NCBI GenBank assembly: GCA_965240325.2
Contig: OZ251231.1
Coordinates: 1,426,001 to 1,490,000, forward strand
Source: Rebecca billardiae RCC1528
Lineage: Eukaryota > Protista > Haptophyta
Length of the DNA stretch: 64,000 bases
Reading direction: 5' to 3'
The notes beneath the pieces were generated by a model. That model searched no databases. It had not been told where the DNA came from and worked only from the letters and a program-made list of their open reading frames with translations. Each line of letters begins with the position of its first letter. Within the stretch, counting starts at the first letter, position 1. Positions 3,313-55,400 of this stretch are shown here, in pieces. The position numbers and the translations under genes were made by a program.

Positions 3313-3326
3313 GCTTGTGCGCGTCT

Positions 3327-27319: not shown

Positions 27320-27950
27320 CTACCCCTTGAAGAAGAAGCGCATCGCGTCGAGCGCGGCGCTTGCGCCGAGCACGAGCGAGGACTCGGCCAGATCGGCGAG
27401 CACGCCGCCCTCGACGAGCGCGCGCGCGGCCCACGGCGCGAGCTGGCCGAGCGCGAGCAGCAGCGGCTCCTCGAGGGCGAACGTGCCGAGCAGCGCCGCG
27501 CCCCACGACGCGAGCATCGCCTCGGTGCGCGCGCGGCCGAAGAGGCGTCCGTACACGATCACGAGGGCGCACAGGCCTGTGTACAGGGCCAGCATGGCCG
27601 CCCACGCGAGGGGCGAGCGCGCCCACCGCGGCGGCGGCGCGCACGGGCAGAGCACGCGCGCCCACTCGGCCGCGCGCCGCTCCGCCGCCCTCTGCCGCGC
27701 GAACCACACGACCATCTCGAGCTCGTCCACGCGCAGGTCGGCGTCGAGATCGAGATCTCGCAGCAGCCGCCGCCGCTCGTGCGGCAGCAGCGGGTCGCCC
27801 AGCTCGGCCATGATCAGCCCGACGCCCGCCTCGTCCACGCGCCCGTCGCCAGTCGGATCGCACCGCGAGAACGCGGCGCGCAGCGCGGCGAGCTCGGCAC
27901 TGGTCAGCTCGGCGTGTGCTCTGAAGAGCGAGCTGCGGCGCGCGCGGCGT

Positions 27951-27982
<32 letters not shown>

Positions 27983-30900
27983 CGGCAGGTCGCCCTCGCC
28001 CATCGGGCTGCCCACGCCGCCGCTCGGCGCGCTTCCCGTCTCCGCCGGCGGCGGCGGGTGAGGCGGCAGCGAGGGTGGCGGCGGTGGCACCGGGCGCCGC
28101 GCACCGACCATCGGCGCGCGCTCGCCGGTAGCTTCGGTCTGCGGCGCCGCGGCGGCCGTCGGCGCGGCGGCGCACGTCAAGCACGGGCGTGGCCCGGGTG
28201 ACGTGGGCGTATCACCCGAGCCCGAGCGAGCAAGCGCGGGCAGGCGCCGCGGGCCACCTCGAGCGCCGACCTCCCGGCTGGAGCCGCCGCCCTGCTCGGC
28301 CTCATCGGGCGCATGCGCCGCCTGCGGCATGTGCGGGCGCTGCTGCCCCGGCGCGCTCATGCACTCGCGTGGCGGCGAGGCGGGGGGCGGGGACGGCGGC
28401 GGCGGCGCCGCGGCAGCGGGCGCGGGCGCGCCGTCTAGCGTGGGCGGCGCGCGCGGCGAGTGCTGCGGCGGCCCGCCACATCCCGCGGCCGACGGCGCGT
28501 CGCGCACGGCGGCGCCGGGCGACGAGGGCGGCCGGACGCGCCGGCGCTGCGAGTGGAAGGAGCCCGAGCCGGCGGCGGAGGCGTCCGAGCCGGCGCTGCC
28601 GCGCCACGAGCCGCTCGGACTGCTGCAGCCGCTGCCGCTGCGGACAGAGCCCGGCGGCGCGGCAAGGTGACGTCGACCCGGCCGGTAGGGGGACTGGAAG
28701 CCGGGCGCGGGCGGCGCGCCGCCGCCCGGGCTGCCGGCCGGCGAGCTGGCGACGGCGCCAGGCTGGCGCTCGGCCGGCGTCGGCGTGGCGCGGAGGCTGC
28801 CGGCGCGCGCGGCGAGCGCGCCGCCCGACTGCAGCGGCGCGACGATGCCGCAGCCGCAGGACGCGCGGCGCCGCGAGCCGCCCGAGCGCGGCGCGCTGCC
28901 AACGCTGCTCGCGCCGGGCGAGCAGCTGCCGCCTGCGCCGGAGCCGCCGCGCCCGTCCATGCTGCGTGGACTGCGCGCCGCCGGCGGCGGTGGTGAACGC
29001 TGCCCCGCGCGCGAGCGCGCGCCCGGCGCTGAGGCTGTTGTGGCGCCGCCCTCCTCCTGGCCCTCCGGCGGGGCGCTGAGTGGCGTGACGGCCGGGCCGC
29101 GCGCGGGCACGGGCGGCGCGCGCGGCGCGGGCTGTGCCGACGCCCACGGCGCGACCCCGAGAAGGCTCGCGCGCGAGCTCACTGCGCTCAGCAGCGTGCC
29201 CGCGGAGGTGGCGGAGGAGAGCGTGTTGGCGGCGGTCGAGCTGCTCACTGAGCCGCGCGCGCCGCACCGCCACCCGCCCTCGCGCGTCTTGGCGCACGCC
29301 GGCCGCGTGTCGACGTATCGGCGCGCGCCGCCGGCGCAGCAGCCACCGCCGCCGGCGCCGCCGGCGCGGCTCGCCCTCCGCCGCTCGGCACGGCCGATCG
29401 CCGGGCCGGCCGACACCGCCTCGGCCGCGCGCGCGCGCGCGTCCGCGTCCGCGCCGAGCCATCCGCCGAGGTGCTCGCGCAGGCCGTGGTACAGCCGCCA
29501 CGACGGCAGCGCGCGGCCGTCGTGCCGCGCGAGGTGCCACGCGCCCTTGAACGCCCACAGCGCCGGCAGCGCCACCGCACCGACGATCAGCGCGCGCAGC
29601 AGCAGCGTCAGCAGCCCCACTCCGCCGCCGTCGCCACCGCCCGCGCCGTCCTGCGTGTACAGCATGCACTCGAGCGCGAGCTGCAGCGCGAGTGTGTTGA
29701 AGAGCGTCTGCACCAGCTCGACGCGCCGCAGCGCGCGCTCGGGGCGCGCGAATAGCAGCGCGAGCAACGTGTGCTGCTCGGCCACCGCCTCGAGCACCGC
29801 GCGCGCGCGCTCGAGGCCGCGCGCACGGCCGGCGCGGGTGTGCGTCAGCATCGAGACGTGCCGCTCCGGGTCGTCGTGCTCGGCGACGTCCTGCGCGGCG
29901 CTGCGCGGCGGAGCAATGCCGGCGAGCGTGGCGGCGCGCGGCGGCAAGCGCGGTGGCGGCGAGCGCGGGCGCGAGGGCGGCGAGCGCGAGCGGGAGCGCC
30001 GCCACTCGAGCGGGGCGGAGGCGGAGGCGGAGGCGGAGTCACCGCTGGTGCGAGCCTCCGCCTCCGCCTCCGCCTCGGTGGCGGGCGCGTCATCCGCCGT
30101 GCCCGCGGGCGCAGCCCACGCCCCGCCCTCGTCCGCCTCCGCCTCCGCGCCCGCCGCCCGCCCCTCCTCCTCCTCCTCCTCCTCCTCCACGACCGGCCTG
30201 GCGCCAAGGTAGCGGTCCAGAGCGCTGCACGACGGCTCCTCCGCGCCGCGGACGGGCGTGGCGATGCCGCCGGCGGCGGCAGCAGCCGAGGCCGCGCGAC
30301 GCGCGCGCACGCGCTCGACGGTCGTCTGCGCCGCGCCCGCGCCCGCGCCGCAGCCCCCGCCGCCGCGGAAGCTGCCCCCATCGGCCACGCTGGCGCACCG
30401 GCCGAAGCTGCCAGCGTCGCGCGCGCTGCCGTCGTCGCGCCGGCCGCTGCCAGCCAGCGAGCGCCCGCGCGAGCGAGGCGAGCGCGACGACGTCCGCGAT
30501 GACAAGCGCAGCGAGCGGACGCCGACCGCGGCGCGCAGGCCGCTGCCGCCGCCGAAGCGCCCGCTGCCGCCTCGCAGCAGCAGCCCGCGCCCGCCGCCCT
30601 CGGAGTCGGCGAGGTCGGCGGCGCCCAGCCCGGACGTGAGCCGCTCCGACTCGAGCCAGCGCGAATACGCCGCGAGCGCGCGCCGGTCCGCCGCGGCCGC
30701 GAGGAGCAGGCACAGGCCGTTGAGGCCGCTCAGCAGGTAGACCAGCCGGTAGATCGTCACATTCTCCCGGTGGCCCTCGGCCGGGCTGAGGAGCACCGCC
30801 GCGGCGTGGGGTAAGCTGAACGTGTTCACGCGCACGCCGGCCGCCTCCTCCGCCGCCGCCTCCGGCGAGGCGGGCACGGAGATGCCCGCAAAGTCGGTGA

Positions 30901-31399
30901 GGTGCGTGCACGCGCAGTAGAGCAGCGACGGCTCGGCGCCGTCGGGCGGCGCGCCCAGCGTCGTGCACCCCTCCGCCGACCACTCGCGCCGCGCCTCGTC
31001 CCACCAGTGGCACGCGTCCACGCGGCCGCACTCGGGCCCGTGGTACGGCGGCTCGCACGCGCAGCCGCGCAGCCCGCCGCCCAGCTCGACGCACGCGCCG
31101 CGCGCGCTGCACGGCGGCGCCGCCGCGCCGTCGGCGGCGTGCGCGGCGCACGACGCGGACGGCTCGACGGCCGCCGCCGCCTCTCGCGCGGGCGGCAGCC
31201 CGAGCACGACCGGCTCGCTCAGCCCCGAGATTGCAATCTGGGCGCCCGTCGTCGGGTCGCGCAGCTGTACGCGCAGCACGCCCGTGCGCAGCGGGCCGAG
31301 CGCGCCGCTCTGGTTGGCGGGCTCGGCGTGCACATTCGAGCCGAAGGCGATGAGCACCACGTCGACGGGCGCGTCGGCCGCGCGCGCCGCGCTGCCGCC

Positions 31400-31430
<31 letters not shown>

Positions 31431-34400
31431 CTGCCGCCGCCGCCGCCAGCCTCCCACAGCGACGCGGGCAGCGCGAGCGCGCCGCCGCCGCCCGCGCCGT
31501 CGAGCGTCGCGTTGGCCGCGAGCGCCGCCGCCGTGCGCCGCGCCACGCTCACGTTGACGCGCGCCGACACCGCCTCGGCGGGCAGCTCGCCCGGGACGGC
31601 GCCGGCGAGCAGCGCGAGCGCCAGGCCCGACGCCGCCTCGAGCGCCGCGCCGCCCAGCGCCACCGCCTCCTCCGCCGTGAGCGCACCGCCGGCGGCGGGC
31701 GCGCCGAGCGCGCTGTCAACAGAGCTGAGCAGCGCGCTCGCCGCCCCGCCGTCGACGCCGCCGGCCGCCGCGGCCGCGCTCGCGAGCGCGGCCACGTGCG
31801 CGAGCCCAGCGGCGCGCGTGGGCGCGTCGAGCGGGACGGGCACGCTCAGCGCGGCCGCGAGCGCCGCCGCCGACTGCGCGCGCGCCTCGGCGGTGGGCGG
31901 CGCGACCGCCGCGCCCTCGGCCGCGTTGAGCCGCACAATGCCCGCCACGAGCGCGCTGCCGTTGCCGCGCGCGCCACCCGGCTCGGCGAGCGCGTGCGCG
32001 AGCCCGTCGAGCAGCTGCATCGCCTCCGCGTGGTCCGAGCGCTCGAGCGCGGAGCGCGCGCGGCCGAGCGCGTCCGCGGGGCCGTCCGCGCTCCCGTCGT
32101 CGTCGGGTGGCTCGACGGTGACGAGCACGGCGGGCGCGCTCGCGCGCGCGCCCACCGCGTCCTCGACGGCCAGCTGCAGCGCGCGCGGCCCCGCCGGCAG
32201 CAGCGCGGACGCGAGCGGCGACGGGCCCGCCACGCCGAGCGGCACGGCCGTCGGCTCGGCCGCGCCGCCCGCGCCGCCGCCGTCCGCGCGGCGCTGGGCG
32301 AACGCGTAGCTCAGCGGCAGCTCGTCAGAGCGCCAGCCCGCCGCCTGCACGCGGAAGCGAGTGCGCAGCGCGACGCCGCCCGCGCTCGGCGCGGCGCTGA
32401 GCGCGCCGCCGTACGGCGGCCGGCTGATCGGCACGACGATGGACGCGCGCGCAACCTGCTGCTGCGCCGCCGAGCCGCCGCCGCCGCCGCCGCCGCCGCC
32501 CGCCGCGTGCACACTCAGCTCGAACGCGTACGTCGCGCCGGGCAGCAGCGCGCCCGAGCGGAAGGCGAGCGTGTGCCCCGCGCCGCCGGTCGTGGTGACG
32601 GCGGCCGTGTCGTCCAGGTCGAGGCCCGCGTCCTCCGGGGCGCCGCCCGCGCCGACGAGGAGCGCGCGCCAGCGCAGCGCGTACGATGCCGCGCCGCTCG
32701 CCCGGCGCGCGGCGGACTCGGCGTCGAGTGCGGTGGCGAGGGCAAGCCGCGCGCTCGGCGCGGACCAGCGCGCGCTGTACGCCGCGCGGCCGAGCGGGGC
32801 GAAGGTGATCGTCGGGATGGGCGCGGCGACGAGCGTCAGCCGCACCGACGCGCTCGCGCCCTGCGGCAGCTCTCTTGCCGCCGCGCTCGGCGGCGCGGCT
32901 GCCGGCTGCGCCGCGCTCACTGCGAGGAACACCTCGTACTCGCCCGCGGCCAGCGCGCCCGGCGGCAGCAGCAGCACGGAGGCGTTGGTCGGCACGGCCG
33001 GGGCCAGCGGCTCGGCGGCGGGCGCGGAGCCGTTCGCCCCGCCGCCGCGTCCCTCCGCGCCCACCGCCACCACGCGCCACGCAAACCGCAGCCCCTCCGC
33101 CGAGCCCGTGTTCGGGTCGAGCGTCGCGGACGCGTCCAGCCGGACGGGCCGCTCGGCGGCCATGCTGCGGTCGCCGCCGGCGATGGTCGCGCGCAGCGGC
33201 AGCTGCTCGACGAGCACGCGCACGCGCGCGCTCGCCGCTGCGCCGCCGTCCGCCGCCATCCTCGCCACGACCTGCACCTCGTACGTGTGCAGCGGCGACA
33301 GGCTGAACGGCGGCAGCAGCAGCGTCGCCGCGGACGCGGAGGCGCCGTCCAGAGCTGCCGGCCGCGCGACGCCGCCGTCCGCGGGCTCGGCGCTGCCGGT
33401 GCGCGTGACGCCGAGCAGCGACCAGCTGAAGAGCACGCGCGCGTCCGCGCGCGCCCAGCAGCCCGCAACCGCCGCCGCCGCGCTGAGCAGCGTCGGCGCC
33501 TCGGCGCGCGCCACCCGGAGCGCGGGGCCGTCGACCGCGACCGTCGGCGCGCCTTGGGCGGCCGCGCGCCACACCGTGTGTGCTGCCGGCTCGGAGAGCG
33601 AGCCGAGCATCGCCGAGCGCACGCGGAGCGCGAAGGTGAGCGCGCTCGCGCGCGGCGCGAGCGCGCCCAGCGCGGGCAGCTCGAGCGCCACGCCGCGCTC
33701 CGCGCGCAGCCGCGCGTTCAGAGCCGCCGCCTCGGCCTCGGACACGCCGGCCGATCGGCTGCGGTCGAGCGCCCACTCGTAGGCCAGACCCGCCGCGCCG
33801 CCGCCGGCCGAGGCGGAGCCGTCGAGCCGGAGCGTGGCGTCGGGGCAGCGCGAGAGCGTGTCGGGGCCCGAGAGCGCGGCGAGCGGCGTCGGGCACGCCA
33901 CGCCCACGCCGCACGGCGCGTCCGCGTCGATGGTGGCGGCGCCGGCCGCCGCGAGCGCGGACGGGTCGCACGGCGGCGCGCAGACCGAGGCCGCCGGGTG
34001 CACCGCGCCCGCGCGCAGCGCCAGCGCCGAGCCCGGGCGCACGGCGGTGCCCACGCCGAGCTGCACGACCAGCGTCGACGCCGAGGGCCAGTAGCACGCC
34101 GGCTCCGCGCCGCTCGTCCGGTTGGGCCCGCCGACGAGCTCGAGCGTACCGTCGTCGAGCGCGCGCGCGCACGCGCCGAGCGCGCCGCCCATGCCCGCGC
34201 GGTCGGTCGGCTGCGCGTCGAAGCGCAGCACGACGGACGTGGCGCTGCCGTCGAGGGACGCGGACTCGAGTCGCGGCGCGTGCGCGCCGATGAACGCAAA
34301 CGTCACGCCCGGCGCGCCCGCCCCCGCCCCCTCCGACGGCGCGGGCTCGAACTGCTGCCCGTTGAGCGACACGCGCACCGCCGCGGGCGCGCCGCCCGCC

Positions 34401-37400
34401 ACGCCGCCGCCCGCCGAGCGCACCTGCACGAGCGAGTCGGTGGCGTTGGCGGGCGGCGGCGCGAGCGCGTCGCCAAACGCCACGCGGAGGAGCCCGCCGA
34501 GGCCCGCGGCGTGCAGCGCGCCCAGGCCCTCGCCCTCGATCACCGTCGGCTCGCCCGCGCCGCCCTGCGCGGGGCGGATCGAGAGCAGCCGCGGCGGCGC
34601 GTAGTAGCGGAATTGCATGCCGTCGGCGGTGGTCGTGTGCGCCGTGCCGTTGCCGAGCGAGAGCTCGAGCGCGACGGCGGCCACGCCGCCGAGCGCGGGC
34701 GCGGGCTCGGAGGCGGGCAGCGGCGGCAGCGTGCAGCGCGCGCGCGTGCTGCCGCCCGCGCCGGCGGGCAGCATGCTCGCGCGCGCCGCGCAGCCGCCGC
34801 CGCCGAGAACGCCACCTCCGCCGCGCAGCACGCAGCACAGCTGGCCCTCGCCGTACTCGGCAAAGCCCGAGCCCTCGAGCGTCACCACCGTGCCGCCGCC
34901 CACCGGGCCCGCGGGCGGGTGCAGCGCGCGCACGCCCACCGCGCCCATCTCGTACAGCCAGATTGCAATCTCGTCGTCGAAGAGCGGCGGCGCGGCGTAC
35001 GCGCCGCCGTCCAGGCGCAGGCTGACCACATAGCGGCCGGCGGGCAGCGCGGACCCGTCGGCCGCGGCGGAGGGCACCGCGCACGCCACGGCGTGCGGGC
35101 TCAGCACGACGGCGGGCGTGCTCGCCTCCGCGCCCGCGCCGCCCGCGCGCGAGAAGGCACACGCCGCGGGCCCGACGTCACCGCCACCGCCGCCACCGTC
35201 CCCGCCGCCGCCCGCCGGGCCGACGAACCCAGCGCCTCGCAGCGTCAGGACGGAGGCCGAGCCGAGCGGCGCGCCGAGCGGCTCGCTGCCGTGCACGACG
35301 GCGCGGATGGCGGGCGGCGGAGGCGCCACGGGCGGCGGCGAGCTCGGCGGGCTGGGTGGTGGGAACGGGAGCTCGCGCGGCGGCGGCGGAGGCGACGGCG
35401 GGCTGGGCGGAGGAGGTGGAGGCGGCGGCTGGCGTGGCGGCTGGCGCGGCGGCGGTGACGGCGGCGGCGGCGGCGATGGCGGTGGGCTCGGCGGCGGCGC
35501 GGGCGCCACCAGGGGTGGCGGTGCGGCGGACTGAAGTGCTGGCGGCGGCGATGGCGGCGGGAATGGCGGCGAGTGCGGCGAGTGCGGCGGCGCCGGTGGC
35601 GAGCCTGGAGGCGGCGAGGGCGCCGCCGTCAGCACCAGCCCGGCGATGCCGAGCACCGAGCCCACGCTCGACTGCAGCTGCGAGCTCAGCTCGGAGACGG
35701 CGGTGTCGGAGCCGAGCACGCCCAGCACGCGCGGGGCGTCCGCCGCCTCCTCCGCGTCGAACTCGACGGAGAAGTCGAAGACGACGCTGCCCGCCGCGTA
35801 CCCGCCGATGCGCACGCGCGAGGGGTGCACGCCACCCACGCTCGCGAGCGCGCCCGCCACCGCCGCCTCTGTCGCGCCGTCGACCGCGCCCACGTCCACG
35901 TCCGCCGTGAGCTCGCCCTGCAGGAGCAGAGGCTGGGCAGCGGGCGGCGGTGGCGAGGGCGGCGGCGAAGGCGAGGGCGAGGGCGAGGGCGGGGAGCGAG
36001 GAGGTGGCAAGCTCGGTGGACGCCTCGGCGGAGGGAACGGTGGCACTGACGGCGGCGGGCTCGGCGGCGGGAATGGTGGCGGGACCACAGGGGGAGACGG
36101 CGGTGGCGAAGGCGGCGGGCCCGGCGGTGGGCTCGGAGGTGGGCTTGGCGGCAAGCTCGGTGGTTGCGAAGGCGGCGGGCTCGGCGGTGCGCCGATGGGC
36201 GGTGCGCTCGGTGGCGGGCTTGGTGGCGGGCTCGGAGGCGGGCTCGGTGGCGGGCTCGGTGGCGGGCTCGGTGGCGGGCTCGGTGGCGGGCTCGGTGGCG
36301 GGCTCGGTGGCGGGCTTGGTGGTGGGCTCGGTGGCGGGATTGGCGGCAAGCGCGGTGGTGGCGAAGGCGGCGGGCTCGGCGGTGCGCCGATGGGCGGTGC
36401 GCTCGGTGGCGGGCTTGGTGGCGGGCTCGGTGGCGGGCTCGGTGGCGGGCTCGGTGGCGGGCTCGGTGGCGGGCTCGGTGGCGGGCGCGGTGACGGGCTC
36501 GGTGGTGGACTTGGTGGTGGGCTCGGTGGCGGGATTGGCGGCAAGCGCGGTGGTGACGAAGGCGGCGGGCTCGGCAGTGCGCCGATGGGCGGTGGCGACG
36601 GCGGTGGGCTTGGTGGCAGGATTGGCGGCAGGCTCGGTGGTGGGCTCGGTGGCGAGCTTGGCGGCGGGCTCAGTGGTGGGCTCGGTGGTAGAGTCGGCGG
36701 CGGGCTTGGCGGCAAGCTCGGTGGTGGCGAAGGCGGTGGGCTCGGCAGTGCGGCGATGGGCGGTGGCGACGGCGGTGGGCTTGGTGGCGGGCTCTGAAGG
36801 GGTGACGGTGGAGGCGATGGTGGCGGGCTCGGCGGTGGCGGGCCCGGGGGCGGTGATGGCGGCGGCAATGGTGGCGGGCTCGGTGGTGGTGTCGGCGGTA
36901 GTGGGCTCGGTGGCGGTGACGGAGGCGGGCTCGGTGGTGGGCTCGGTGGCACGCTCGGCGGCACTCTCGGTGGCGGCGACGGCGGAGGCGACGGTGGCGG
37001 GCTCAGCGGTGGCGGGCCCGGGGGCGGTGATGGCGGGGGCGATGGTGGCGGGCGCGGCGGTGGTGTCGGCGGTGGTGGGCTTGGTGGCGGTGACGGAGGC
37101 GGGCTCGGTAGTGGGCTTGGTGGCACGCTCGGTGGCGGCGACGGCGGAGGCGACGGTGGTGGGCTCGGCGGTGGCGGGCCCGGGGGCGGTGATGGCGGCG
37201 GCGATGGTGGCGGGCTCGGTGGTGGTATCGGCGGTGGTGGGCTTGGTGGCGGTGACGGAGGCGGGCTCGGTGGTGGGCTCGGTGGTGGGCTCGGCGGCAC
37301 GCTCGGTGGCGGCGACGGCGGAGGCGACGGTGGCGGGCTCGGCGGTGGCGGGCCCGGGGGCGGTGATGGCGGCGGCAATGGTGGCGGGCTCGGTGGTGGT

Positions 37401-40400
37401 GACAGCGGTGGTGGGCTCGGCGGCGGTGACGGAGGCGGGCTCGGTGGTGGGCTCGGTGGTGGGCTCGGCTGCACGCTCGGTGGCGGCGACGGCGGAGGCG
37501 ACGGTGGCTGGCTCGGTGGTGGCTGGCCCGGGGGCGGTGATGGCGCGGGGAATGGTGGCGGGCTCGGTGGTGGTGTTGGCGGTGGTGGGCTCGGCGGCGG
37601 TGACGGAGGCGGGCTTGGTGGTGGGCTCGGTGGCACGCTCGGCGGCACTCTCGGTGGCGGTGACGGCGGAGGCGACGGTGGCGGGCTCGGCGGTGGCGGG
37701 CCCGGGGGCGGTGATGGCGGGGGCGATGGTGGCGGGCGCGGCGGTGGTGTCGGCGGTGGTGAGCTTGGCGGCGGTGACGGAGGCGGGCTCGGTGGTGGGC
37801 TCGGTGGCACGCTCGGCGGCACGCTCGGTGGCGGTGACGGCGGAGGCGACGGTGGCGGGCTCGGCGGTGGCGGGCCCGGGGGCGGTGATGGCGGCGGCGA
37901 TGGTGGCGGGCTCGGTGGTGGTGACGGCGGTAGTGGGCTCGGTGGCGGTGACGGAGGCGGACTCGGTGGTGGGCTCGGTGGCACGCTCGGCGGCACGCTC
38001 GGTGGCGGCGACGGCGGAGGCGACGGTGGCGGGCTCGGCGGTGGCGGGCCCGGGGGCGGTGATGGCGGCGGCGATGGTGGCGGGCTCGGTGGTGGTGACG
38101 GCGGTAGTGGGCTCGGTGGCGGTGACGGAGGCGGACTCGGTGGTGGGCTCGGTGGCACGCTCGGCGGCACGCTCGGTGGCGGCGACGGCGGAGGCGACGG
38201 TGGCGGGCTCGGCGGTGGCGGGCCCGGGGGCGGTGATGGCGGCGGCGATGGTGGCGGGCTCGGTGGTGGTGTGGGTGGTGGTGGGATCGGTGGCGGTGAC
38301 GGAGGCGGACTCGGTGGTGGGCTCGGTGGCACGCTCGGTGGCACGCTCGGTGGCGGCGACGGCGGAGGCGATGGTGGCGGGCTCGGTGGTGGCGGGCCCG
38401 GGGGCGGTGATGGCGGCGGCGATGGTGGCGGGCTCGGTGGTGGTGTCGGCGGTAGTGGGCTCGGTGGCGGTGACGGAGGCGGGCTCGGTGGTGGGCTCGG
38501 TGGCACGCTCGGCGGCACTCTCGGTGGCGGCGACGGCGGAGGCGACGGTGGCGGGCTCGGCGGTGGCGGGCCCGGGGGCGGTGATGGCGGGGGCGATGGT
38601 GGCGGGCGCGGCGGTGGTGTCGGCGGTGGTGAGCTTGGCGGCGGTGACGGTGACGGAGGCGGACTCGGTGGTGGGCTCGGTGGCACGCTCGGCGGCACGC
38701 TCGGTGGCGGTGACGGCGGAGGCGACGGTGGCGGGCTCGGCGGTGGCGGGCCCGGGGGCGGTGATGGCGGCGGCGATGGTGGCGGGCTCGGTGGTGGTGA
38801 CGGCGGTAGTGGGCTCGGTGGCGGTGACGGAGGCGGACTCGGTGGTGGGCTCGGTGGCACGCTCGGCGGCACGCTCGGTGGCGGCGACGGCGGAGGCGAC
38901 GGTGGCGGGCTCGGCGGTGGCGGGCCCGGGGGCGGTGATGGCGGCGGCGATGGTGGCGGGCTCGGTGGTGGTGACGGCGGTGGTGAGCTTGGTGGCGGTG
39001 ACGGAGGCGGGCTCGGTGGTGGGCTCGGTGGTGGGCTCGGTGGCACGCTCGGTGGCGGCGACGGCGGAGGCGACGGTGGCGGGCTCGGTGGCGGCGACGG
39101 CGGTGGCGACGGTGGCGGGCTCGGCGGTGGCGGGCCCGGGGGCGGTGATGGCAACGGCGATGGTGGCGGGCTCGGTGGTGGTGACGGCGGTGGTGAGCTT
39201 GGCGGCGGTGACGGAGGCGGGCTCGGTGGTGGGCTCGGTGGTGGGCTCGGTGGCACGCTCGGTGGCGGCGACGGCAGAGGCGACGGTGGCGGGCTTGGCG
39301 GTGGCGGGCCCGGGGGCGGTGATGGCGCGGGGGATGGTGGCGGGCTCGGTGGTGGTGACGGCGGTGGTGAGCTTGGCGGCGGTGACGGAGGCGGGCTCGG
39401 TGGTGGGCTCGGTGGTGGGCTCGGTGGCACGCTCGGTGGCGGTGACGGCGGTGGGCTTGGTGGCGGGCTCGGCGGTGGCGGGCCCGGGGGCAGTGATGGC
39501 GGCGGCAATGGTGGCGGGCTTGGTGGTGGTGTCGGCGGTGGTGAGCTTGGCGGCGGTGACGGAGGCGGGCTCGGTGGTGGGCTCGGTGGTGGGCTCGGTG
39601 GCACGCTCGGTGGCGGTGACGGCGGTGGGCTTGGTGGCGGGCTCGGCGGTGGCGGGCCCGGGGGCGGTGATGGCGGCGGCAATGGTGGCGGGCATGGTGG
39701 TGGTGACGGCGGTGGTGGGCTCGGCGGCGGTGATGGAGGCGGACGCGGCGGTGGGCTCGGTGGTGGGCTCGGTGGCACGCTCGGTGGCGGCGACGGCAGA
39801 GGCGACGGTGGCGGGCTTGGCGGTGGCGGGCCCGGGGGCGGTGATGGCGCGGGGGATGGTGGCGGGCTCGGTGGTGGTGACGGCGGTGGTGAGCTTGGCG
39901 GCGGTGACGGAGGCGGGCTCGGTGGTGGGCTCGGTGGTGGGCTCGGTGGCACGCTCGGTGGCGGTGACGGCGGTGGGCTTGGTGGCGGGCTCGGCGGTGG
40001 CGGGCCCGGGGGCGGTGATGGCGGCGGCAATGGTGGCGGGCTTGGTGGTGGTGTCGGCGGTGGTGAGCTTGGCGGCGGTGACGGAGGCGGGCTCGGTGGT
40101 GGGCTCGGTGGTGGGCTCGGTGGCACGCTCGGTGGCGGTGACGGCGGTGGCGACGGTGGCGGGCTCGGCGGTGGCGGGCCCGGGGGCGGTGATGGCGGCG
40201 GCGATGGTGGCGGGCGCGGTGGTGGTGACGGCGGTGGTGAGCTTGGCGGCGGTGACGGAGGCGGGCTCGGTGGTGGGCTCGGTGGTGGGCTCGGTGGCAC
40301 GCTCGGTGGCGGCGACGGCGGTGGGCTTGGTGGTGGGCTCGGAAGAGGTGACGGCGGAGGCGATGGTGGCGGCGGCGATGGTGGCGGGCTCGGTGGTGGT

Positions 40401-45729: not shown

Positions 45730-45755
45730 TATCTATCTATCCGGATCTCGTCTCG

Positions 45756-45822
<67 letters not shown>

Positions 45823-47456: not shown

Positions 47457-47733
47457 CCCTCCGAGCGAGATGCACACCGCGGGTCCAGACGGCAGCGATC
47501 CCGGTAATCTGGCCTCGCGAACCTTGGTTCCAACTTCCAACCACACCGGAGTAGCGTGAACTCATCACGGCCTTCTCAAGGTCACCGACGATGATGTCGC
47601 AAACTTTCGCGAACCGTACGCGAACCGATATTTATTCGATGGTTCCCCAGACCGAGGCCAGCCGACGTGGCGAACGAACGCGAACCTACTCAACCTAGGC
47701 GAAAAGCCGGTTCGTAAACCCGGTTCGCGAACT

Positions 47734-48260
47734 TTTTACGAACCGGGACCGCTGCCAGTTGGACGGCATCCGGTTTCAGATCGGTGCCCGTTACTTTTCC
47801 GAATAACGAAACACAATGGCGGCGGCGCATTATTTCGAACTCTCTAGCAGCTGCTACTCTGCTAGTCGTCGTCGTTATTGTAATTCATCAGCATTACATC
47901 TACAGTGCGTATCATTATAAAGGCGTCAGACGGAAGCGCCGAGCCTGCCCCGCCCGTGCCCGAGCAGCTGAGCCTGCTGCCTGCGCCGCGAACGTTGTTT
48001 TACGAACCGGGACCGCGCTGCTGCTCACCAGTTGGACGGCAGCCGGTTTCAGATCGGTGCCCGTTATACTTCTCCGAATAACGAAACACAATGGCGGCGG
48101 CGCATTATTCGGCATTATTCGCGACGAACTCTCTGTATAGCTATAAGCTAAGCTATAGTCGTCGTCGTTATTGTAATTCATCATTACATCCGTACAGTGC
48201 GTATCATAAAGGCGTGACGGAAGCGCCGAGCCTGCCCCGTGCCCGAGCAGCTGAGCCTGC
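47734..48260. repeat. ~250-bp diverged tandem duplication (about 47734-47976 and 47998-48260)
   Basis: Shared blocks occur twice in the same order: ttttacgaaccgggacc, ccggtttcagatcggtgcccgtta, ccgaataacgaaacacaatggcggcggcgcattatt and gcccgagcagctgagcctgc. Confidence 0.9.
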
Positions 48261-48294
48261 GCCTGCGCGCCGGCCCACGGCGCCGGAGGCCCAC

Positions 48295-49398
48295 TCACGC
48301 CTGGAGCGCGTTGATGATGCTCGCCATAGAGCCCGCGAGGCACTCATTGACAAAGTCGCCGAACGGCGTGCCGCCGCCGAATGCGCGCTCGAAGAGCGCG
48401 GGCGCGATCACAACAAGTGCGATGATGATGGGCTCCTGAGAGAGGGCGCGGGGGCGCCGAGCGCGCGGCGCGAGCGCAGAGCGGCGGCGGGCGTGCAGCG
48501 TGAGCGTCGATCGGGAGGCGGGCGCGCGCGGGCGCGCGCGCGCGGCGCGGGCGGCACGCGCGCGGCCTGCTGCCTGCTGCGTGCGCACCTCGACGCCCAG
48601 GCTCTGCACCTCCGCCAGCCCCCACGACATCATCATGAGCCGCGTCTGCTCGTTCCCAAACTGGCGCGCGTACACGACGGCTAGCATCGCCATGGCGGTG
48701 AAGGCGGCCCAGACGGCGAGCCACGCGATGGCGAGGCGCACGCGCGGCGGCGGCGAGCAGCGCGCGAGCGCCGCCCGGCACGCGCGGAGCCGGCTCTCCC
48801 GCCGCCGCTTCTCGCGCGCCGCCTCCTCCTGCGTGCGACGCAGGCCGTGGGCGCGCGCGCGCGTGCGGTCAGTGGTGCGCGTGCGCGGTCAGTGGTGCGT
48901 GTGTGCGGTCAGTGGTGCGTGTGTGCGGTCAGTGGTGCGTGTGCGCGGTCGGCGGTGCGGCCCAGGGCAGCCGTGCGGCGCGCGGCGGCCGCGGCCGGCA
49001 GCGGGTGCACGCTCGGAGGTGCGGAGTGGCGCGCGGCCCGCCACGCGCCTCGCCCCGACGCGCGCCCACACACGCCCGCGCGCGCACCTTCACCATCCGG
49101 TCGTACCACCCCACCAGCTCGGCGAAGCTCACCAGACCGTCCGCGTCCAAGTCGAGCTCGTCGGCGACGATGCGCACGCGCCGCCGGCCCATCCGGAAGC
49201 CGAGGTCCTTGAGGAGCGCGCCGAGCTCGTCGATGTCGACCTGGCCCGAGCCGTCGGCGTCGTACCGCACGAACTTGCGCCGCAGCAGCCGCAGCGTCTC
49301 CGGCTCCAGGTCGTGCTCCACCTCCTCGCCGCCCAGCTCCGAGTCCTCCTCTGCAAAGTACACGCCGTCCGCGGCGCGCGAGCCGCCGCCGCCGCCGA

Positions 49399-49429
<31 letters not shown>

Positions 49430-52400
49430 CGAGGGCGTGGCGGGGGCGTGCTCGGCGGGGCCGATGGACGCGCCGCGCGGCGTGGCGCGCGACAAGGCGG
49501 CGCTCTCGGCGTGCGACGCGACGCGCATGCGCACGCGCGGCCCGCTGCTCGCCGCCGACGGCCGCGCCGCCGCCCCGCGCGCCGCCGCCCCCGTCACCGC
49601 AACGGCGCTGGCCGCCGTTGTGAACTTGAGAAGCGCCGGCCGCGGCGCCGAGGGCGGGAGCTCGCTCGCCGCGCGCACGGGCGGCGCGGTGGGCGAGCGC
49701 GGGCGCGGCGGCGAGGGCGGCGGCTCGTTGTACGCCGGCGGCGGCGGCCCGCGCTCACCGCCACCGCCACCGCCACCGCCGCTGCCGTCGGCCGCGCCGC
49801 CGCTCGCCCACGCGGCACTTGCCGGCGTAATGCTGGGCGGCAGCACAGAGCCCAGCGCTCCGCCGTACTCCCGCGCGCGGCTCATGCGCTCGGCGGGCGA
49901 GAGCGGCCGCGCCGGGTGGACGGGCGGCCGGCCGGACGACGCGTACACCGCCGCGCGCCGCGGCTCGAGCGACGACGACGACGACGACGGCCTCCTCGGC
50001 GCGGCCGGCTGGCAGCGCGCGCCGCTCGGCTCGCGGTGCGGTCGCGAGGTCTGAGGGCGGGCGGGCGGACGCGTGCGCACGGTGGGCGTGGCGGACGCGA
50101 CGGACGACGCGGGCGGCGAGGACGGCGCCGTCGTCGGCGCTGGCTTGGCGGGCTGCGCCGCTGGCGCCGCCGGGGCGGGCGTCGCGCGCGTGAAGACGCG
50201 CCCACCGCCGGCAGCGGCGGGCTGCGCGCCGCCGGCAGCGGCCGGCGCGCCGGCCGGCGCGCCGGCCGGCGGCGCTCGCGGGCTGCGCAGGTGAAACGTC
50301 TGCCACAGCAGCGCGAGCGTGTTGCGGTCGACGCCGCCGCCCTCCGCTGTGTCCAGCCTGCGCGTGATCTCGTTCAGCCGGCGCACGCGCCGCCGGTCGT
50401 GCGAGCGCGGCGTCGGCTCGGCCGAGCCCGCCGCCGAGCAGCCATCCGCGACCGGCTGCGCGCACACGTCCGCTCCGCCCGCCATCGCCTGGCGGAGCGC
50501 GCGCAGCTTGGTGCTCGAGCGCGGGCGCTCGGGGCGCTCGGCGTCGTCGACGCCGACGCGCGCGTGCCTGTACTCGTCCAGCCGCGCGCGCGGCGTCGGA
50601 CCGCCGCCCGCCACCGCCTCGAGGCGCTCCTCGGCGGCGGCGGAGAGCCGCGCGCTGCGCCGCGCGCTCCGGCGCACGCCGCCGCCGCCGCCGCCGTCCG
50701 CGCCGCCGTCGTCGCCCTCGCTCCCGCCAGAGTCGACGGCGCGCGAGCGCGAGCGCACGCCGCCGCCGGCCGAGCCGCCGCGCGCGTGCGCGGGCGCGGC
50801 GTCGCCCGCCTCGCTCCCCGAGTCGGTCGTCGCGTCGTCCTCCTCCTCCTCGTCCCCCGAGCCCTCGGAGCGGGTCAGGTCGGCCTCGACCTCGGCGGCG
50901 CCGCCGCCCTCGGGCGCGATCCGGATCGCGCGCCGCGCACGCCCGCTGGAGGGGCGGGGCGCGGGCGGCGTGGGCACCGCGGCGCTCTGCCCGTCCCACG
51001 GCGCGCACACCGGCTGGGTCGGGTCTCGCGGGCTCGCGCCGCACGACGCCGCCGCGTGCTGCGCGCGCCACAGCGCTCGCTCGCCGCCGGACGCCGGCGC
51101 GGCGCGCCCGCGCGCGGAGCTCGGCCGAGAGATCGGAGCGGCGCGCGGCGCGGACTCAAAGCGCGCGCGCAGCGAGGGCACGCGCGCGGCGGGCGGGCCG
51201 ACCTCCGCGCCCTCCTCGGGCGAGATGCGCGCGACCTGCGAGCGCGGCGTGAGCGCGGCGGGCGCGAGCACGCGCGCCGCCGGCGCGCCCACCTCCGCGC
51301 CCTCCTCGGGCGAGATGCGCGCGACTTGCGAGCGCGGCGTGAGCGCGGCGGGCGGTGCGAACACGCGCGTGGCCGCCAGTGCCGCGCCGCCCGCAACGTC
51401 CGCGCCCTCCTCGGGCGAGATGCGCGCGGCCTGCGAGCGCGGCGTGAGCGCGGCGGGCGCGAGCACGCGGCGCGTCGCCGCCGCGCCCGCCTCCGCCGCG
51501 CCCGCCCGCGCCTCGGCGCCCGCCGGCGCGTCGCCGGCGCCAGCGTCGGCGCGCGCCGCGCCTTCGGCCGAGTCCGCGCCGCCCGCGCGCGCGCCCGCCT
51601 CGGCGGCGTGCGGGCGCGAGCGGCGGAAGCTCGCGACGGGCGAGCGGCCCGCGGAGGACGGGCGGCTCGGCGACGCCGCGCGCTGCTCGGGCAGCGCGAC
51701 CACGCCGAGCTGCGCCGCGCGCAGCGTGCGCCGCACCGAGAAGCGGAAGACCGAGCGCTCGCGCGCCGCCTGCGCGGGCGTGCGCTGCGCCGCGCCGGCC
51801 GTCGCGTCCGGCTCGCCCTTGAGGAGCAGGCCGAAGGCGCGCTCGGAGAGCGTGCCCGAGCTGCGGCCGTAGCCCCACGCGAGCACGAGCTTGTGCACCT
51901 CGAGCGCGGGCACGAGCAGCCCGCCGGTGAACAGCGCGGCGAAGACGATGTGCACGAGCGAGACGGCGGCGCCGTCGGCCGTCGTCGGCGCCGGGTCGGC
52001 GTCGAACAGGATGCACGAGATGAGAACGCCCAGCATGGCGACCGACCAGAAGAGCTGGCAGAGCTCGGCGCGCTTCGCGTCCTCGGGGTCTCCGAACCAC
52101 AGCCCGAGCACCGTGTGGTCGCTCTGGATCTTGTCCAGCACGCGCCGCACCACCTTGGTCAGCGTGTGCTCCGTCTTTGGGTCCCCGCCTCGTAGCTTGA
52201 GGGCGGCGCCGAGCGGCACGCCTGCGCGCTCCGCGTCCGCGCGCACGTCGTCGCGCGCGATGCGGCCGCGCGCGTGGCGCTGCAGCACGAGCGCCGCGCG
52301 CTCCGCCTTCGCCGCCAGCGCGTCGTCCACCGCGTCCAGCCGCGCCTCGAGCCGCTCGGCGAACGTCGCCGCCCGCGCCTTGCGCTCGAGCTCGGCCTGG

Positions 52401-55400
52401 GCCGCGCGCGCGCGCCGCTCGCTCGCGTCGCGCTTGTCGCGCGCGGCGAAGAAGAGGAGCGTGAGCGCGTTGGCGCCCGCCATGCCGAGGACGAGGCCGT
52501 ACACCCACGGGTTCTCCGCCAGCTCGGGCGCGGCGAGCACCGCGAAGTCCTCCCCCGACAGCGTGTTCACGTTGAACGACTCGGCGTCCGAGCTGAACTG
52601 GTCGGCACTCGTCGGCACAGAGAGACCTCCAAAGTCGGTGAGGTGGTCGCACGCGCAGTACAGCCAGTCGGGCTTGGCGCCGGCCGGGAGCTCGCGGTCC
52701 TCGGAGGGGAGCGTCTCGCACCCCTCGCTCGACCAGCGCTCGCGCGCCTCGTCCCAGTACTGGCACGTGTCGCGCAGCTCGCACGCCGCGCCGTACCACG
52801 GCGGAGGGCACTCGCACGCGCCACCAAAGCACGGGGAGCGCCCGTTGCACTCGTCGAACTCGACGCACGTGCCGGTGGTGCCGTAGACCTTGGCGGTGGG
52901 CCTGGCCTGCTGCAGCGGCAGCGCGACGATCAGCGGCTCCGCCAGCCCGCCGATCTCGAGCTCGTCGCCCGACGCAGCCGAGCGCAAGGTCACGGACAGC
53001 ACGCCCGTGCGCAGCCCGCTGCCCGCGCCCGAGCTCGCGCCGAGCGCCAGGCTGACGCCGCCGCCGCCGCCGCCCGCCGTCGCGTTGGCGCCGTGGGCGA
53101 CGGCGTGCACGTTGCGATCGAACGAGGCGAACACGACGTCCACGCCGCCGCTGAGCGCGCCCGCCGGCTGCCCGTCGAGCAGGCCGGACGGGACGGCGAG
53201 AGACGCGGCGCCGCCCGCGCCGCCGAGCGCGCCGCCCGCGCCCGCGCCGCCAAAGCCGAGCAGCGCGGCCGGGTCGACGCGCGTCGCGCTCAGGTTGAGG
53301 TTGGCGCCGAGCACTTCGAGCGGGGGCTCGCCCACCACCGCGCCGGCGAGCAGCGCGCCCGCCAGCCCCGACGCCGCCGCGCGCGCCTCCTCCTCCACCG
53401 CGCCCAGCTCGTCCAGGCTCAGAACGCTCGCGTTGGCGCCGAGCACGCCGTCGATAGTGCGAAAAAGCGCGGCGGCGGTGTCGGCGTCGACGCCGACGGC
53501 GGCAGACTCGCGCGCGAGCGAGGCGGCCTGCGCGATCGACGACGCCTGCGACGGCCCGTCGAGCGGCACGCCGCTCGAGACCACGCTGTCGAGCACGCCC
53601 GCGCTCAGCTTGCGCGACGTCGCCGTCGAGACCGCCACCGCCGCCGCGTCGCCGAGCACGGCGATCATCTCGCGCACGACGGCGGACGCGCTCTCGTTGG
53701 CCGAGTTGGACGCGTCCAGGAACGGCGCGCACGGCACGAGCGACTGCGCGAGCGCGCCGAGGATCTGCTTCGCCGCGTCGCCGCTCGCGCGCTCGACCGC
53801 GTACCGCGCGCTCTCGAGCGCGCCGGGCACGGTCGCGCCGCACGTGCTCGACGGGAGCGGCAGCACGAGCACGTCGACGGCGGCGGCGGCCGCGGCGCCG
53901 AGCGCGTCGAGCACCTCGACGCCGAGCGAGAGGTTGCCCGCGGGCAGCACGGCGCGCGCGGCGGGCGTGCGCAGCGTCTCGCCGAGCGACGCGCGCGCGC
54001 CGCTGCGCGCCGCGGAATACGAGAACGCGTAGCGCAGCGGCAGGTCCTCCGGGTCATCCGCCCAGCCGAGCGCCGAGAGGGCGTGCGGGGAGATGAGGGC
54101 GAACGCGCCCGAGCGCGGCGAGACGCGGAGCACGCCGCCGTGCGGCGGCCGGTTGATGAGCACGCGCACCTCGGCGCTCGCCACCTGCTCGCTCCCGCGC
54201 ACCTCGAGCCGGAACGCGTACTCCGCGCCCGGCGTGAGCGCGCCCGAGCTGAGCGCGAGCGCCGCGCCGCGCACGCCCGTCGCCGAGACGCCCGGTGCGG
54301 TCAGGTCGAACGGCACCTCGGCGCCGCCCACGATGGCGGCCGCGCTCCACAGCCGCGAGTACGACACGAGGCCGCGCGCCTGCAGCGAGGCGGAGGCCTC
54401 GTCGAGGCTCGTGCTCAGCACGAGCCGCTGCGTCGGCCGCTCCCACGTCGGGTTGTGCTTGCGAGCCTCGAGGGGCGCAAACGAGATCGAAGGCACCACG
54501 CCCGAGATCACCCGCACCCGAACGGACGCGCCGGCCGGTGCGAGGCCGGGCTTGGAGAGGGAGAGGCTCGCGCGCCACACGCCGAGCGAGAGCGTGCCGG
54601 GCGGCACGAGCAGCGCGCGCGCGTTGTGCACCGTCGCGTTGCGCGCCACCGCCTCCGCCAAGCCCACCGCCGCCGCCTCCTCCGCGCCGCCGCCGCCCGC
54701 ACCGGCAGCGCTGCTCGCGAGCTCGAGCGACCAGCTGAAGCGGAGCGCCGCATCGGGCACGCGCGCGCCGCTCGCGTCGAGCGCGCGCGGCACGTTAGGG
54801 TCGGACGAGGCGGAGGCGTCGACGTTCAGCTCGGATGCGTCGGACGCGCGCCGGTCGCCGCCGGCGATCACCGCGCGCAGCGGCTCCGGCACGACGCGCA
54901 GGCGCACGCTCGCGGAGGTGCGCGCGCTCGGCTGCGCGCGCATGAACGCCACGAGCTGAAGCGTGTACGTGCGGCCGGCGCGCAGCGAGAAGGGCGGGAG
55001 GAGCAGCGTGGCGCGCGTGGCGGCGGAGAGGTCGAGCTCGGCCGCGGCGTCGGGCTCGGGCTCGCCGCTCTCCGACAGCGTCGCGTTCAGCGCGCGCCAC
55101 TCGAAGCCGACCGCCGCGCCCTCGCCCACCGCCCAGCACTCGGCCAGGCTCGCCGCGCCGAGGAGGAGCGCCTCTGCGGACGCGCGCACGGCCTGCTCGA
55201 ACGGCCCGTCGATCACGAGGCTGGGGCTCGGCACGGCCGTGCGCGACACCTCCCACTCCGCCACATTCGACGGCACGCCGAGGAACGACGTCACGCGCAG
55301 CTGGAACACAAAGTGCTCGCCGCGCACGGACGGCAGCTCGAGCGCGCGCGTGTCGGGCGGGAGCGCCGCCAGCACCGCGTTCAGCTCGGACGCAAAGTCG

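What the first reader, a model, noticed from the sequence alone, without database searches (positions are those of the whole stretch)
27320..52770. Channel-less polycystin-1 subtype: intact GPS, PKD1 TM1-5 only, no PLAT, EF-hands in the TM3-TM4 loop
Seen in both paralogues: an HL/T autoproteolysis motif (30896-30904 and 52637-52645), an EGF-like module just before the GPS, TM1, a low-complexity loop, the H..L.....R.E motif, TM2-3, a long disordered loop ending in two EF-hands, TM4-5 with EP, and then the stop. Established: animal PKD1 has PLAT after TM1 and a further 6-TM TRP-like module. Inference: a cleavable, Ca2+-regulated receptor using only the N-terminal 5-TM bundle, possibly partnering a separate channel.
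Basis: partly seen in the sequence, partly recalled or inferred. Interest (0 to 1): 0.7.

Follow-up and report, generated by a model that had tools for sequence, protein, structure and literature searches.

The report
Channel-less polycystin-1-like algal surface receptors
Two neighbouring giant genes of a GC-rich haptophyte alga encode self-cleaving surface receptors that keep only the first five membrane helices of the kidney-disease protein polycystin-1, carry calcium-sensing parts instead of its channel half, and belong to a family of about 100 such genes in this genome.

Summary
Both minus-strand genes (A, 27320-42394; B, 48298-61837) have REJ, a GPS motif with HL|T at the stated coordinates, five membrane helices and an EF-hand pair in the TM3-TM4 loop. 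Neither has PLAT or PKD_channel.

The stop is real. All 31 paralogues examined, a metagenomic relative, and all 176 retrieved database homologues (two are MMETSP transcripts) end about 45-50 residues after TM5.

The PKD1 reading is supported mainly by fold. AlphaFold models of gene A and of a B-like paralogue both match human polycystin-1 residues 3063-3610 (TM1-TM5), at Z 11.3 and 13.8 (rank 1 of 48,161 chains). Sequence similarity is faint but lies at the equivalent helices of fish PKD1.

New here:
- The genome has roughly 90-100 such genes and 30 or more PKD_channel matches, none adjacent to a family member.
- Named relatives are Pavlovales.
- A B-type subfamily has a canonical IQ motif in the TM1-TM2 loop, always with two intact EF loops.
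- Gene A's first EF loop is degenerate.

Channel-less, PLAT-less PKD1-family proteins are already known in sea urchin, so this is a new variant of a known kind. Two first-reader notes elsewhere in this genome describe the same base. Partnership with a channel is untested.

The parts
27320..42394 (-). Gene A main exon: a 5024-codon ORF with its stop at 27320-27322. It encodes a polyproline stalk, TIG, REJ, GPS, five TM helices and EF-hands.
42426..43966 (-). Gene A 5' exons encoding RCC1-like repeats (the N-terminal head)
   Evidence: Pfam RCC1 / WD40_RLD; ORF pieces
35525..41977 (-). Gene A SPPP-type polyproline stalk of about 2,150 residues
   Evidence: translation
32012..33328 (-). Gene A REJ domain
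   Evidence: Pfam PF02010, E 4e-25
31028..31114 (-). Gene A EGF-like Cys module (sub-threshold match)
   Evidence: Pfam EGF_2, E 0.033
30887..31012 (-). Gene A GPS motif, with HL|T at 30896-30904 followed by the conserved stalk
   Evidence: Pfam PF01825, 25.2 bits; (C, C, H, L, T and F invariant in 19 paralogues)
30689..30754 (-). Gene A TM1
   Evidence: hydropathy; model helix 55-96 with pLDDT above 90
29528..29773 (-). Gene A H-motif (29708-29773), TM2 (29660-29725) and TM3 (29528-29614)
   Evidence: alignment A1; model helices 400-421 and 437-465
27710..27886 (-). Gene A EF-hand pair at the end of the roughly 550-residue disordered TM3-TM4 loop. The first loop is degenerate.
   Evidence: Pfam EF-hand_7, 25.6 bits (below cut-off); calmodulin matches
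27326..27628 (-). Gene A TM4 (27539-27628), TM5 with the EEP motif (27410-27535), and the C-terminal helix that ends in the family's conserved tail (27326-27400)
   Evidence: alignment A2; model; stop conservation
49094..61837 (-). Gene B main exon: Cys-domain repeats, four TIG stretches, REJ (53855-55027), GPS, TM1-3, a long loop and the EF pair
52628..52768 (-). Gene B GPS motif, with HL|T at 52637-52645
   Evidence: Pfam, 27.9 bits
52253..52285 (-). Gene B IQ motif (L-Q-x3-R-G-x3-R) in the cytoplasmic TM1-TM2 loop, where PKD1 has PLAT
   Evidence: Q, R, G and R nearly invariant in B-type paralogues
51842..52117 (-). Gene B H-motif, TM2 and TM3
   Evidence: alignments A1 and A4
49103..49285 (-). 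Gene B EF-hand pair with two canonical loops
   Evidence: Pfam EF-hand_7, 36.6 bits
48588..48828 (-). Gene B exon 2: TM4 and the first half of TM5. The flanking introns are 48829-49093 and 48436-48587.
   Evidence: aligned in A2
48298..48435 (-). Gene B exon 3: the EP half of TM5, the C-terminal helix and the stop (48298-48300)

Best explanation
Genes A and B encode giant type-I-like surface receptors of the polycystin-1/REJ family.

Architecture (shown):
- A variable adhesive head and a stalk sit on TIG-REJ-GAIN/GPS.
- These are anchored by a five-helix membrane module that is the counterpart of the polycystin-1 N-terminal TM1-TM5 bundle.
- The protein ends about 45-50 residues after TM5, with no PLAT and no TRP-like channel half.
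- Both cytoplasmic loops are regulatory. The TM3-TM4 loop ends in an EF-hand pair, and in the B-type subfamily the TM1-TM2 loop carries an IQ motif.

Mechanism (inferred):
- The ectodomain is cut at HL|T and stays bound non-covalently.
- Pulling on, or shedding of, the N-terminal fragment exposes the strongly conserved stalk, which acts on the 5-TM bundle.
- The bundle's output is tuned by Ca2+ through the built-in EF pair. In B-type proteins the EF pair could clamp the protein's own IQ helix, like a tethered calmodulin lobe.
- The most likely effector is one of the separately encoded PKD2-like channels, because a 5-TM module cannot form a pore itself.
For: Domains: Pfam REJ, GPS, TIG and EF-hand.

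Fold:
- The gene A model matches chain 8z6b_A (human PC1/PC2 complex) at Z 11.3, 198 residues aligned, PC1 residues 3063-3610.
- The B-like paralogue model matches the same range at Z 13.8, 195 residues aligned, rank 1 of 48,161 chains.
- No other membrane protein appears in either top 50.

Sequence:
- The family profiles' best matches in fish PKD1 fall at 2859-2955, right after PLAT (2726-2831), and at 3202-3268.
- 0, 9 and 0 of 1000 local shuffles reach those scores. hhalign gives E 0.0047 and 0.055.
- A bridge form, P0183, has REJ-GPS-5TM, a PKD1-like FTRPQR motif and PLAT, and ends 20 residues after TM5.

Real C-terminus.

Family size: about 90 loci for each TM block and about 100 REJ loci.

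IQ and EF-hand co-occurrence: 12 of 12 in this genome; outside it, 8 of 8 against 4 of 31.

Conserved stalk and HLT.

Separate channels: 30 PKD_channel matches, none within 20 kb downstream of a family member.
Against: - Profile searches of the TM blocks against all PDB sequences found no PKD1 at E up to 10.
- hhalign probabilities are low (7% and 1%).
- The rmsd of the fold match is high (5.2-5.7 A), and Z 11-14 can occur by chance for helical bundles.
- Both models used overlapping alignments of the same family, so they are not fully independent.
- No RNA data exist for this organism.
- Cleavage, Ca2+ binding, IQ-EF contact and any channel partner are untested.
- Gene A lacks the IQ motif and has a degenerate first EF loop.
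Confidence: 0.72

Rival explanations
1. The five-helix module only looks like PC1 TM1-5. Under this reading the family is a separate class of GAIN/REJ receptor whose membrane anchor arose independently of polycystin-1.
For: No PKD1 hit from three family profiles against PDB sequences. hhalign probabilities are 1-7%. Foldseek found no membrane match. The tool's own caution is that Z under about 13 is common for helical bundles.
Against: - REJ plus GPS is the PKD1-family hallmark.
- The same PC1 range (3063-3610) was hit by two models, once at rank 1, and no other membrane protein reached the top 50.
- The weak sequence matches land on the positionally equivalent helices and beat shuffles.
- The long TM3-TM4 cytoplasmic loop is shared.
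- P0183 bridges the motifs.
Confidence: 0.15
2. The gene models are incomplete, and further 3' exons encode TM6-11, so these would be ordinary 11-TM polycystin-1 genes.
For: In genes A and B the stop codon overlaps a GT (GG|GTAG in A, GC|GTGAGT in B), which could be an intron donor.
Against: - In 29 other paralogues the stop context has no GT, yet the stop is at the homologous place.
- Nothing downstream is conserved between A and B.
- The next ORFs are separate genes about 0.85 kb away, one of them sulfotransferase-like.
- There is no PF08016 match in the window.
- MMETSP transcript ORFs end 4-6 residues after the block.
- In the metagenomic relative the next gene is on the opposite strand.
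Confidence: 0.02
3. The proteins are as described but act without a channel, as a diversified adhesion or gamete/cell-recognition repertoire. Their 5-TM base and Ca2+/calmodulin-type loops would signal on their own or only anchor the ectodomain.
For: - About 100 paralogues with very different heads.
- REJ proteins act in gamete recognition in sea urchin, are male-gamete specific in Ectocarpus, and REJ-like proteins sit at the gamete contact site in Cryptosporidium (PMC1934368, PMC4700764, bioRxiv 10.64898/2026.10.13.757955).
- P0183 carries a GEX2-type Ig domain.
- Sea urchin SpREJ1, 2, 8 and 9 have only 1-2 TM helices.
Against: The strict conservation of five helices, the stalk and the cytoplasmic motifs goes beyond what a passive anchor needs. 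In animals the homologous bundle is always part of a channel complex.
Confidence: 0.3

Closest known systems
Animal polycystin-1 (PKD1, PKD1L1-3, PKDREJ; structure 8z6b/6A70)
   Same: REJ domain, GPS with HL|T, a conserved stalk, a five-helix N-terminal membrane bundle with the same topology, a long cytoplasmic TM3-TM4 loop, the H-x-x-L...R motif before TM2, and an EP motif in TM5.
   Different: No PLAT after TM1 (a low-complexity loop or an IQ motif instead). No TM6-11, TOP domain or PKD_channel. No C-terminal coiled-coil tail. An EF-hand pair is inserted before TM4. The ectodomain is built from a polyproline stalk, RCC1 or other heads instead of PKD repeats, lectin or LRR.
Sea urchin SpREJ proteins with few TM helices (SpREJ1, 8, 9: one TM; SpREJ2: two; SpREJ7: six), PMC1934368
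   Same: PKD1-family members with REJ and GPS that lack the channel half. Only half of the ten have PLAT.
   Different: Those have 1, 2 or 6 predicted helices, not a complete stand-alone TM1-5 bundle. They have no EF-hand or IQ. There are ten genes, not about 100. I did not compare their sequences here.
Ectocarpus Esi0130_0068 (brown alga, male-gamete specific), PMC4700764
   Same: An algal protein with REJ, GPS and a short multi-pass C-terminus (6-7 predicted helices, 1427 aa).
   Different: Much smaller, with no EF-hand reported. Whether its helices are homologous to this 5-TM module was not tested here.
Adhesion GPCRs
   Same: A GAIN/GPS autoproteolytic module with a tethered stalk in front of the first membrane helix, and a giant modular adhesive ectodomain.
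   Different: Adhesion GPCRs have a 7-TM secretin-like domain. Here there are five helices, no 7tm Pfam match, and a fold match to PC1 only.
Database relatives in Pavlovales (Diacronema lutheri KAG8462819 and KAG8461221; Pavlovales sp. CCMP2436 KAJ1633484 and KAJ1636386)
   Same: The same architecture: TIG, REJ, GPS, H-motif block, EF pair, and a C-terminal TM4-5 block.
   Different: They are annotated only as 'REJ domain-containing', 'EF-hand domain-containing' or hypothetical. I found no description of the 5-TM module or of the family.

Membership tests
Polycystin-1 / REJ (PKD1) family | REJ domain (PF02010) | tested here: met
   E 4e-25 (A) and 2.4e-32 (B). About 100 loci genome-wide.
Polycystin-1 / REJ (PKD1) family | GPS motif with HL|T directly before TM1 | tested here: met
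   25.2 and 27.9 bits against a cut-off of 22.5. C-x-C-x-H-L-T-x-F is invariant in 19 paralogues.
Polycystin-1 / REJ (PKD1) family | Actual autoproteolysis at the GPS | not testable with these tools
   Needs a western blot or mass spectrometry of the native protein.
Polycystin-1 / REJ (PKD1) family | PLAT/LH2 domain in the TM1-TM2 loop | tested here: not met
   No PF01477 match in A or B. There are only 2 PLAT matches in the genome; the one examined (C10) is a PP2C fusion and the other was not inspected.
Polycystin-1 / REJ (PKD1) family | N-terminal membrane bundle TM1-TM5 | tested here: met
   Fold: chain 8z6b_A residues 3063-3610, Z 11.3 and 13.8, 198 and 195 residues aligned, rmsd 5.7 and 5.2. 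Sequence support is only weak: searches are positive, while searches are blank.
Polycystin-1 / REJ (PKD1) family | TM6-TM11 TRP-like channel half with TOP domain (PF08016, PF20519) | tested here: not met
   No match in A, B or the window. The protein ends about 45-50 residues after TM5 in every relative.
Adhesion GPCR | Seven-helix secretin-like domain after the GPS | tested here: not met
   No 7tm Pfam match. Five helices in the models. No GPCR among the fold matches.
EF-hand pair (calmodulin-like lobe) | Two helix-loop-helix motifs with canonical 12-residue loops | tested here: met
   B: 36.6 bits (cut-off 30) and two canonical loops. A: 25.6 bits (below cut-off), with the first loop lacking Glu12. 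Fold matches to calmodulin and troponin C. Ca2+ binding itself was not tested.
IQ calmodulin-binding motif | [ILVFM]-Q-x3-[RK]-G-x3-[RK] on a helix | tested here: met
   Present in gene B and in 11 of 19 paralogues examined, and absent from gene A. It lies on a predicted helix in the L054 model. Binding was not tested.

The most novel reading that the evidence does not exclude
The pavlovophyte REJ-GPS-5TM proteins may preserve the unfused state of polycystin-1. On this reading, animal PKD1 arose when such a 5-TM GAIN receptor fused to a PKD2-like channel subunit. In these algae, about 100 interchangeable receptors with different heads would dock onto a few dozen separately encoded PKD2-like channels as a combinatorial sensor-channel system, with a built-in calmodulin-like lobe and IQ switch providing Ca2+ feedback.
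Probability: 0.2. Interest if true: 0.85.

Novelty: new variant of a known kind. Interest (0 to 1): 0.6.

Why it matters
The function of the polycystin-1 TM1-TM5 bundle, and how the GPS stalk acts on it, is an open question in polycystic kidney disease research. In animals the bundle is always welded to the channel half.

This family offers the same module on its own:
- It occurs in about 100 natural variants in a culturable group of algae.
- The stalk is conserved.
- The cytoplasmic inserts vary from member to member: EF pair, IQ, PLAT, RING, or almost nothing.

That makes three questions directly testable: whether the bundle is an autonomous signalling unit, whether it docks onto PKD2-type channels in trans, and whether PKD1 arose by gene fusion. 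It also flags a very large, unannotated receptor repertoire in Pavlovales.

Tried and rejected
- phmmer of the gene A C-terminus against the PDB gave only calmodulins.
- Profiles A1, A2 and A6 against the PDB gave no PKD1.
- Foldseek against the PDB and the ESM Atlas shape search matched only the EF-hand part.
- The ESM Atlas feature search gave no usable hit.
- NCBIfam TIGR00864 matches only the REJ part, so it says nothing about the membrane region.
- Large ORFs with PKD_channel matches, and the stronger of the two PLAT loci, were inspected as possible true 11-TM PKD1 genes. They are ankyrin/SPRY-channel, four-domain Ion_trans, WD40 and PP2C proteins. None has REJ or GPS.
- RNA evidence: one run holds the locus, at low coverage. 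Its contig crosses an intron boundary unspliced, so it reads as genomic DNA of the same organism. No transcript information came from it.
- A word-index search with gene B's GPS-TM3 region found a single metagenomic relative.
- A loose literature search for REJ in haptophytes, diatoms and dinoflagellates returned nothing relevant.
Only 19 complete and 12 partial paralogues were therefore analysed.
Feature coordinates were derived instead from model residue numbers and earlier outputs.
- Gene B's three exons were never joined. They were aligned and searched exon by exon, and the single-ORF paralogue L054 served as B's proxy for folding.
Full report
**What is there**

The window is G000:C14:1426001-1490000, from a 72-Mb, 41-contig genome with 75-84% GC in coding stretches. 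Two giant minus-strand ORFs fill the finding: 27320-42394 (gene A, 5024 codons) and 48929-61837 (gene B, 4302 codons).

Pfam results:
- REJ: E 4e-25 in A and 2.4e-32 in B.
- GPS: 25.2 and 27.9 bits, against a cut-off of 22.5.
- TIG in both, and an EF-hand pair in both. B scores 36.6 bits, over the cut-off. A scores 25.6 bits, under it.
- Sub-threshold EGF-like matches lie just before the GPS.
- Neither gene has PLAT or PKD_channel.

The HLT triplets are exactly at 30896-30904 and 52637-52645.

**Gene structure and the C-terminus**

Gene A runs as one ORF from the polyproline stalk to the stop. Its RCC1-repeat exons lie upstream at 42426-43966.

In gene B the big ORF reads into an intron after the EF pair. 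The true end lies in two short exons, 48588-48828 and 48301-48435, flanked by GT..AG introns. Their translation matches gene A's TM4-TM5 residue by residue in motif order.

Six results speak against it:
1. Twelve paralogues found with the TM4-5 block, and 19 more complete ones, all stop at the homologous place after a conserved hydrophobic tail. Their stop contexts are not donor-like.
2. Nothing downstream of the stop is conserved between A and B, at DNA or protein level.
3. The next ORFs are separate genes. The one after B has a weak sulfotransferase match.
4. The window has no PF08016 match, while 30 lie elsewhere in the genome. None of these is within 20 kb downstream of any family member.
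5. A metagenomic relative (P0001 on L060) has the same last exon, followed by a gene on the opposite strand.
6. An exhaustive profile search of 1.84 billion proteins with the TM4-5 block found 337 clusters. In all 176 proteins retrieved the block is C-terminal, with at most 68 residues beyond the profile end. These include two MMETSP transcript ORFs that end 4-6 residues after it.

The proteins are truly channel-less.

**Is the membrane part PKD1 TM1-5?**

Sequence profiles of the TM2-3 block (A1), the TM4-5 block (A2) and compact relatives (A6) found no PKD1 among PDB sequences at E up to 10. Ordinary sequence search therefore does not show it.

Fold comparison does:
- An AlphaFold model of gene A from the GPS to the end, built on a 19-sequence family alignment, has pLDDT 85-97 for the stalk plus TM1, the pre-TM2 helix, TM2, TM3, the EF pair, TM4, TM5 and a C-terminal helix. 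The loops score below 40.
- Aligned against 48,161 representative chains, its only non-EF-hand match in the top 50 is 8z6b_A, human polycystin-1 in the PC1/PC2 complex. The match has Z 11.3, rmsd 5.7 A and 198 residues aligned, spanning model residues 31-1158 and PC1 residues 3063-3610.
- From my own knowledge of the human protein, that PC1 range is TM1 through TM5.
- A second model, of the B-like single-ORF paralogue L054, gives the same chain and the same range at rank 1, with Z 13.8, rmsd 5.2 A and 195 residues aligned. The next row, an EF-hand protein, is at Z 11.1.

I then obtained a fish polycystin-1 (P0182, Amia) through a REJ-based search:
- The best match of A1 anywhere in its 4030 residues is 2859-2955, directly after PLAT (2726-2831). 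It aligns the invariant His, the R-x-x-R/Q motif and the Pro of TM3.
- The best matches of A2 and A6 are at 3202-3268. They align the YG..F motif and the EP motif.
- In 1000 shuffles that preserve local composition, 0, 9 and 0 reach these scores.
- hhalign gives E 0.0047 and 0.055, but low probabilities.

A metagenomic protein, P0183, is a bridge form. It has filamin, invasin and GEX2-type Ig domains, then REJ, GPS and five helices with a PKD1-like FTRPQR motif. It ends 20 residues after TM5. Its PLAT domain sits in the TM3-TM4 loop and an IQ motif precedes TM4.

Together these results support homology with the PC1 N-terminal bundle. The high rmsd and the shared family alignments of the two models leave some room for convergence.

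**The family**

- Each TM block hits about 90 loci in this genome and REJ hits about 100, mostly in open frames of 4,000-12,000 codons.
- Named relatives are Pavlovales: Diacronema lutheri and Pavlovales sp. CCMP2436. They are annotated only as REJ- or EF-hand-domain proteins.
- The TM3-TM4 loop is an insertion hot spot. It holds an EF pair in the pavlovophyte members, PLAT in P0183, a RING finger in P0146, two or three IQ motifs in others, and only 21-34 residues in compact forms such as P0102/P0160.
- This genome has two subtypes. B-type proteins (12 of 21, including gene B) have a canonical IQ motif about 50 residues before the H-motif, plus two canonical EF loops 36 residues apart. A-type proteins (including gene A) have no IQ and have degenerate EF loops.
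- IQ upstream and EF loops co-occur 12 of 12 times here. Outside this genome they co-occur 8 of 8 times, against 4 of 31 without IQ. These counts are not phylogenetically independent.

**How it probably works**

Shown:
- Topology with the GPS outside, and both long loops and the tail inside. This is consistent with the cytosolic EF and IQ modules.
- An invariant HL|T and a nearly invariant stalk.
- A conserved 5-TM core.

Inferred:
- Autoproteolysis at HL|T.
- Force- or ligand-dependent exposure of the stalk, which acts on the bundle.
- Ca2+ feedback through the EF pair, which in B-type proteins could bind the protein's own IQ helix.
- Output through a PKD2-like channel encoded elsewhere. The genome has at least 30 PKD_channel matches, and none of the large ones inspected carries REJ or GPS.

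A channel-independent adhesion or gamete-recognition role is a serious rival, given REJ biology in sea urchin, Ectocarpus and Cryptosporidium (PMC1934368, PMC4700764, bioRxiv 10.64898/2026.10.13.757955).

**Comparison with what is known, and novelty**

Sea urchin SpREJ proteins already show that PKD1-family members can have 0-6 helices and lack PLAT (PMC1934368). An Ectocarpus REJ-GPS protein has 6-7 predicted helices (PMC4700764). 'Channel-less' is therefore not new in kind.

As far as I could find, three things are new:
- A complete, conserved, stand-alone TM1-5 module.
- Its EF-hand/IQ equipment.
- Its expansion to about 100 genes in a pavlovophyte.

Two first-reader notes on other pieces of this genome describe the same base under other heads. 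A third note covers gene A itself.

**Limits**

- No RNA data exist for this organism. The only run holding the locus looks like low-coverage genomic DNA.
- Gene B's exons were never joined.
- More paralogues could not be fetched.

Noticed in passing
window 52253-52285 (-); also L036, L038-L040, L042, L043, L045-L047, L051, L054: A canonical IQ motif sits in the TM1-TM2 loop of gene B and of 11 paralogues, always together with two canonical EF loops. This suggests an intramolecular EF-pair/IQ switch.
   Followed up: partly
P0183 (ENA metagenome protein, 4954 aa): A channel-less REJ-GPS-5TM protein with eight filamin repeats, invasin and GEX2-type Ig domains. PLAT is inserted in the TM3-TM4 loop and an IQ motif precedes TM4. 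It bridges this family and animal PKD1 and hints at a gamete-attachment role.
   Followed up: partly
P0146; P0102/P0160; P0105, P0125, P0175 (database relatives): The TM3-TM4 loop is an insertion hot spot. It holds a RING finger in one lineage, 2-3 IQ motifs in others, and only about 31 residues in compact forms without an EF-hand.
   Followed up: partly
window 42426-43966 (-) and 35525-41977 (-): Gene A begins with RCC1-repeat exons and a roughly 2,150-residue SPPP polyproline stalk. Another first-reader note covers this head-shaft-anchor layout.
   Followed up: partly
window 46599-47561 (-) and 25532-27061 (-): Each receptor gene is followed, about 0.85 kb downstream on the same strand, by a separate ORF with a signal-anchor-like start. 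The one after B has a weak Sulfotransfer_3 match. The one after A has no Pfam match.
   Followed up: partly
G000 loci L055-L057 (C16:880300-890299, C15:1631000-1639500, C19:1084500-1092500): PKD_channel matches in this genome include unusual large ORFs. One combines SPRY, LRR, ankyrin and a polycystin-type channel in 3225+ codons. One is a four-domain Ion_trans channel. One is a 2245-codon WD40 protein. None has REJ or GPS.
   Followed up: no
G000:C10:2962704-2964362 (L059:4704-6362): The stronger of the genome's two PLAT matches is fused to a PP2C phosphatase domain, not to a polycystin. The second match (C33) was not inspected.
   Followed up: no
window 48900-48990 (-): The first intron of gene B's 3' end contains four or more tandem copies of a roughly 20-bp unit (ACCGCACACACGCACCACTG-like).
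   Followed up: no
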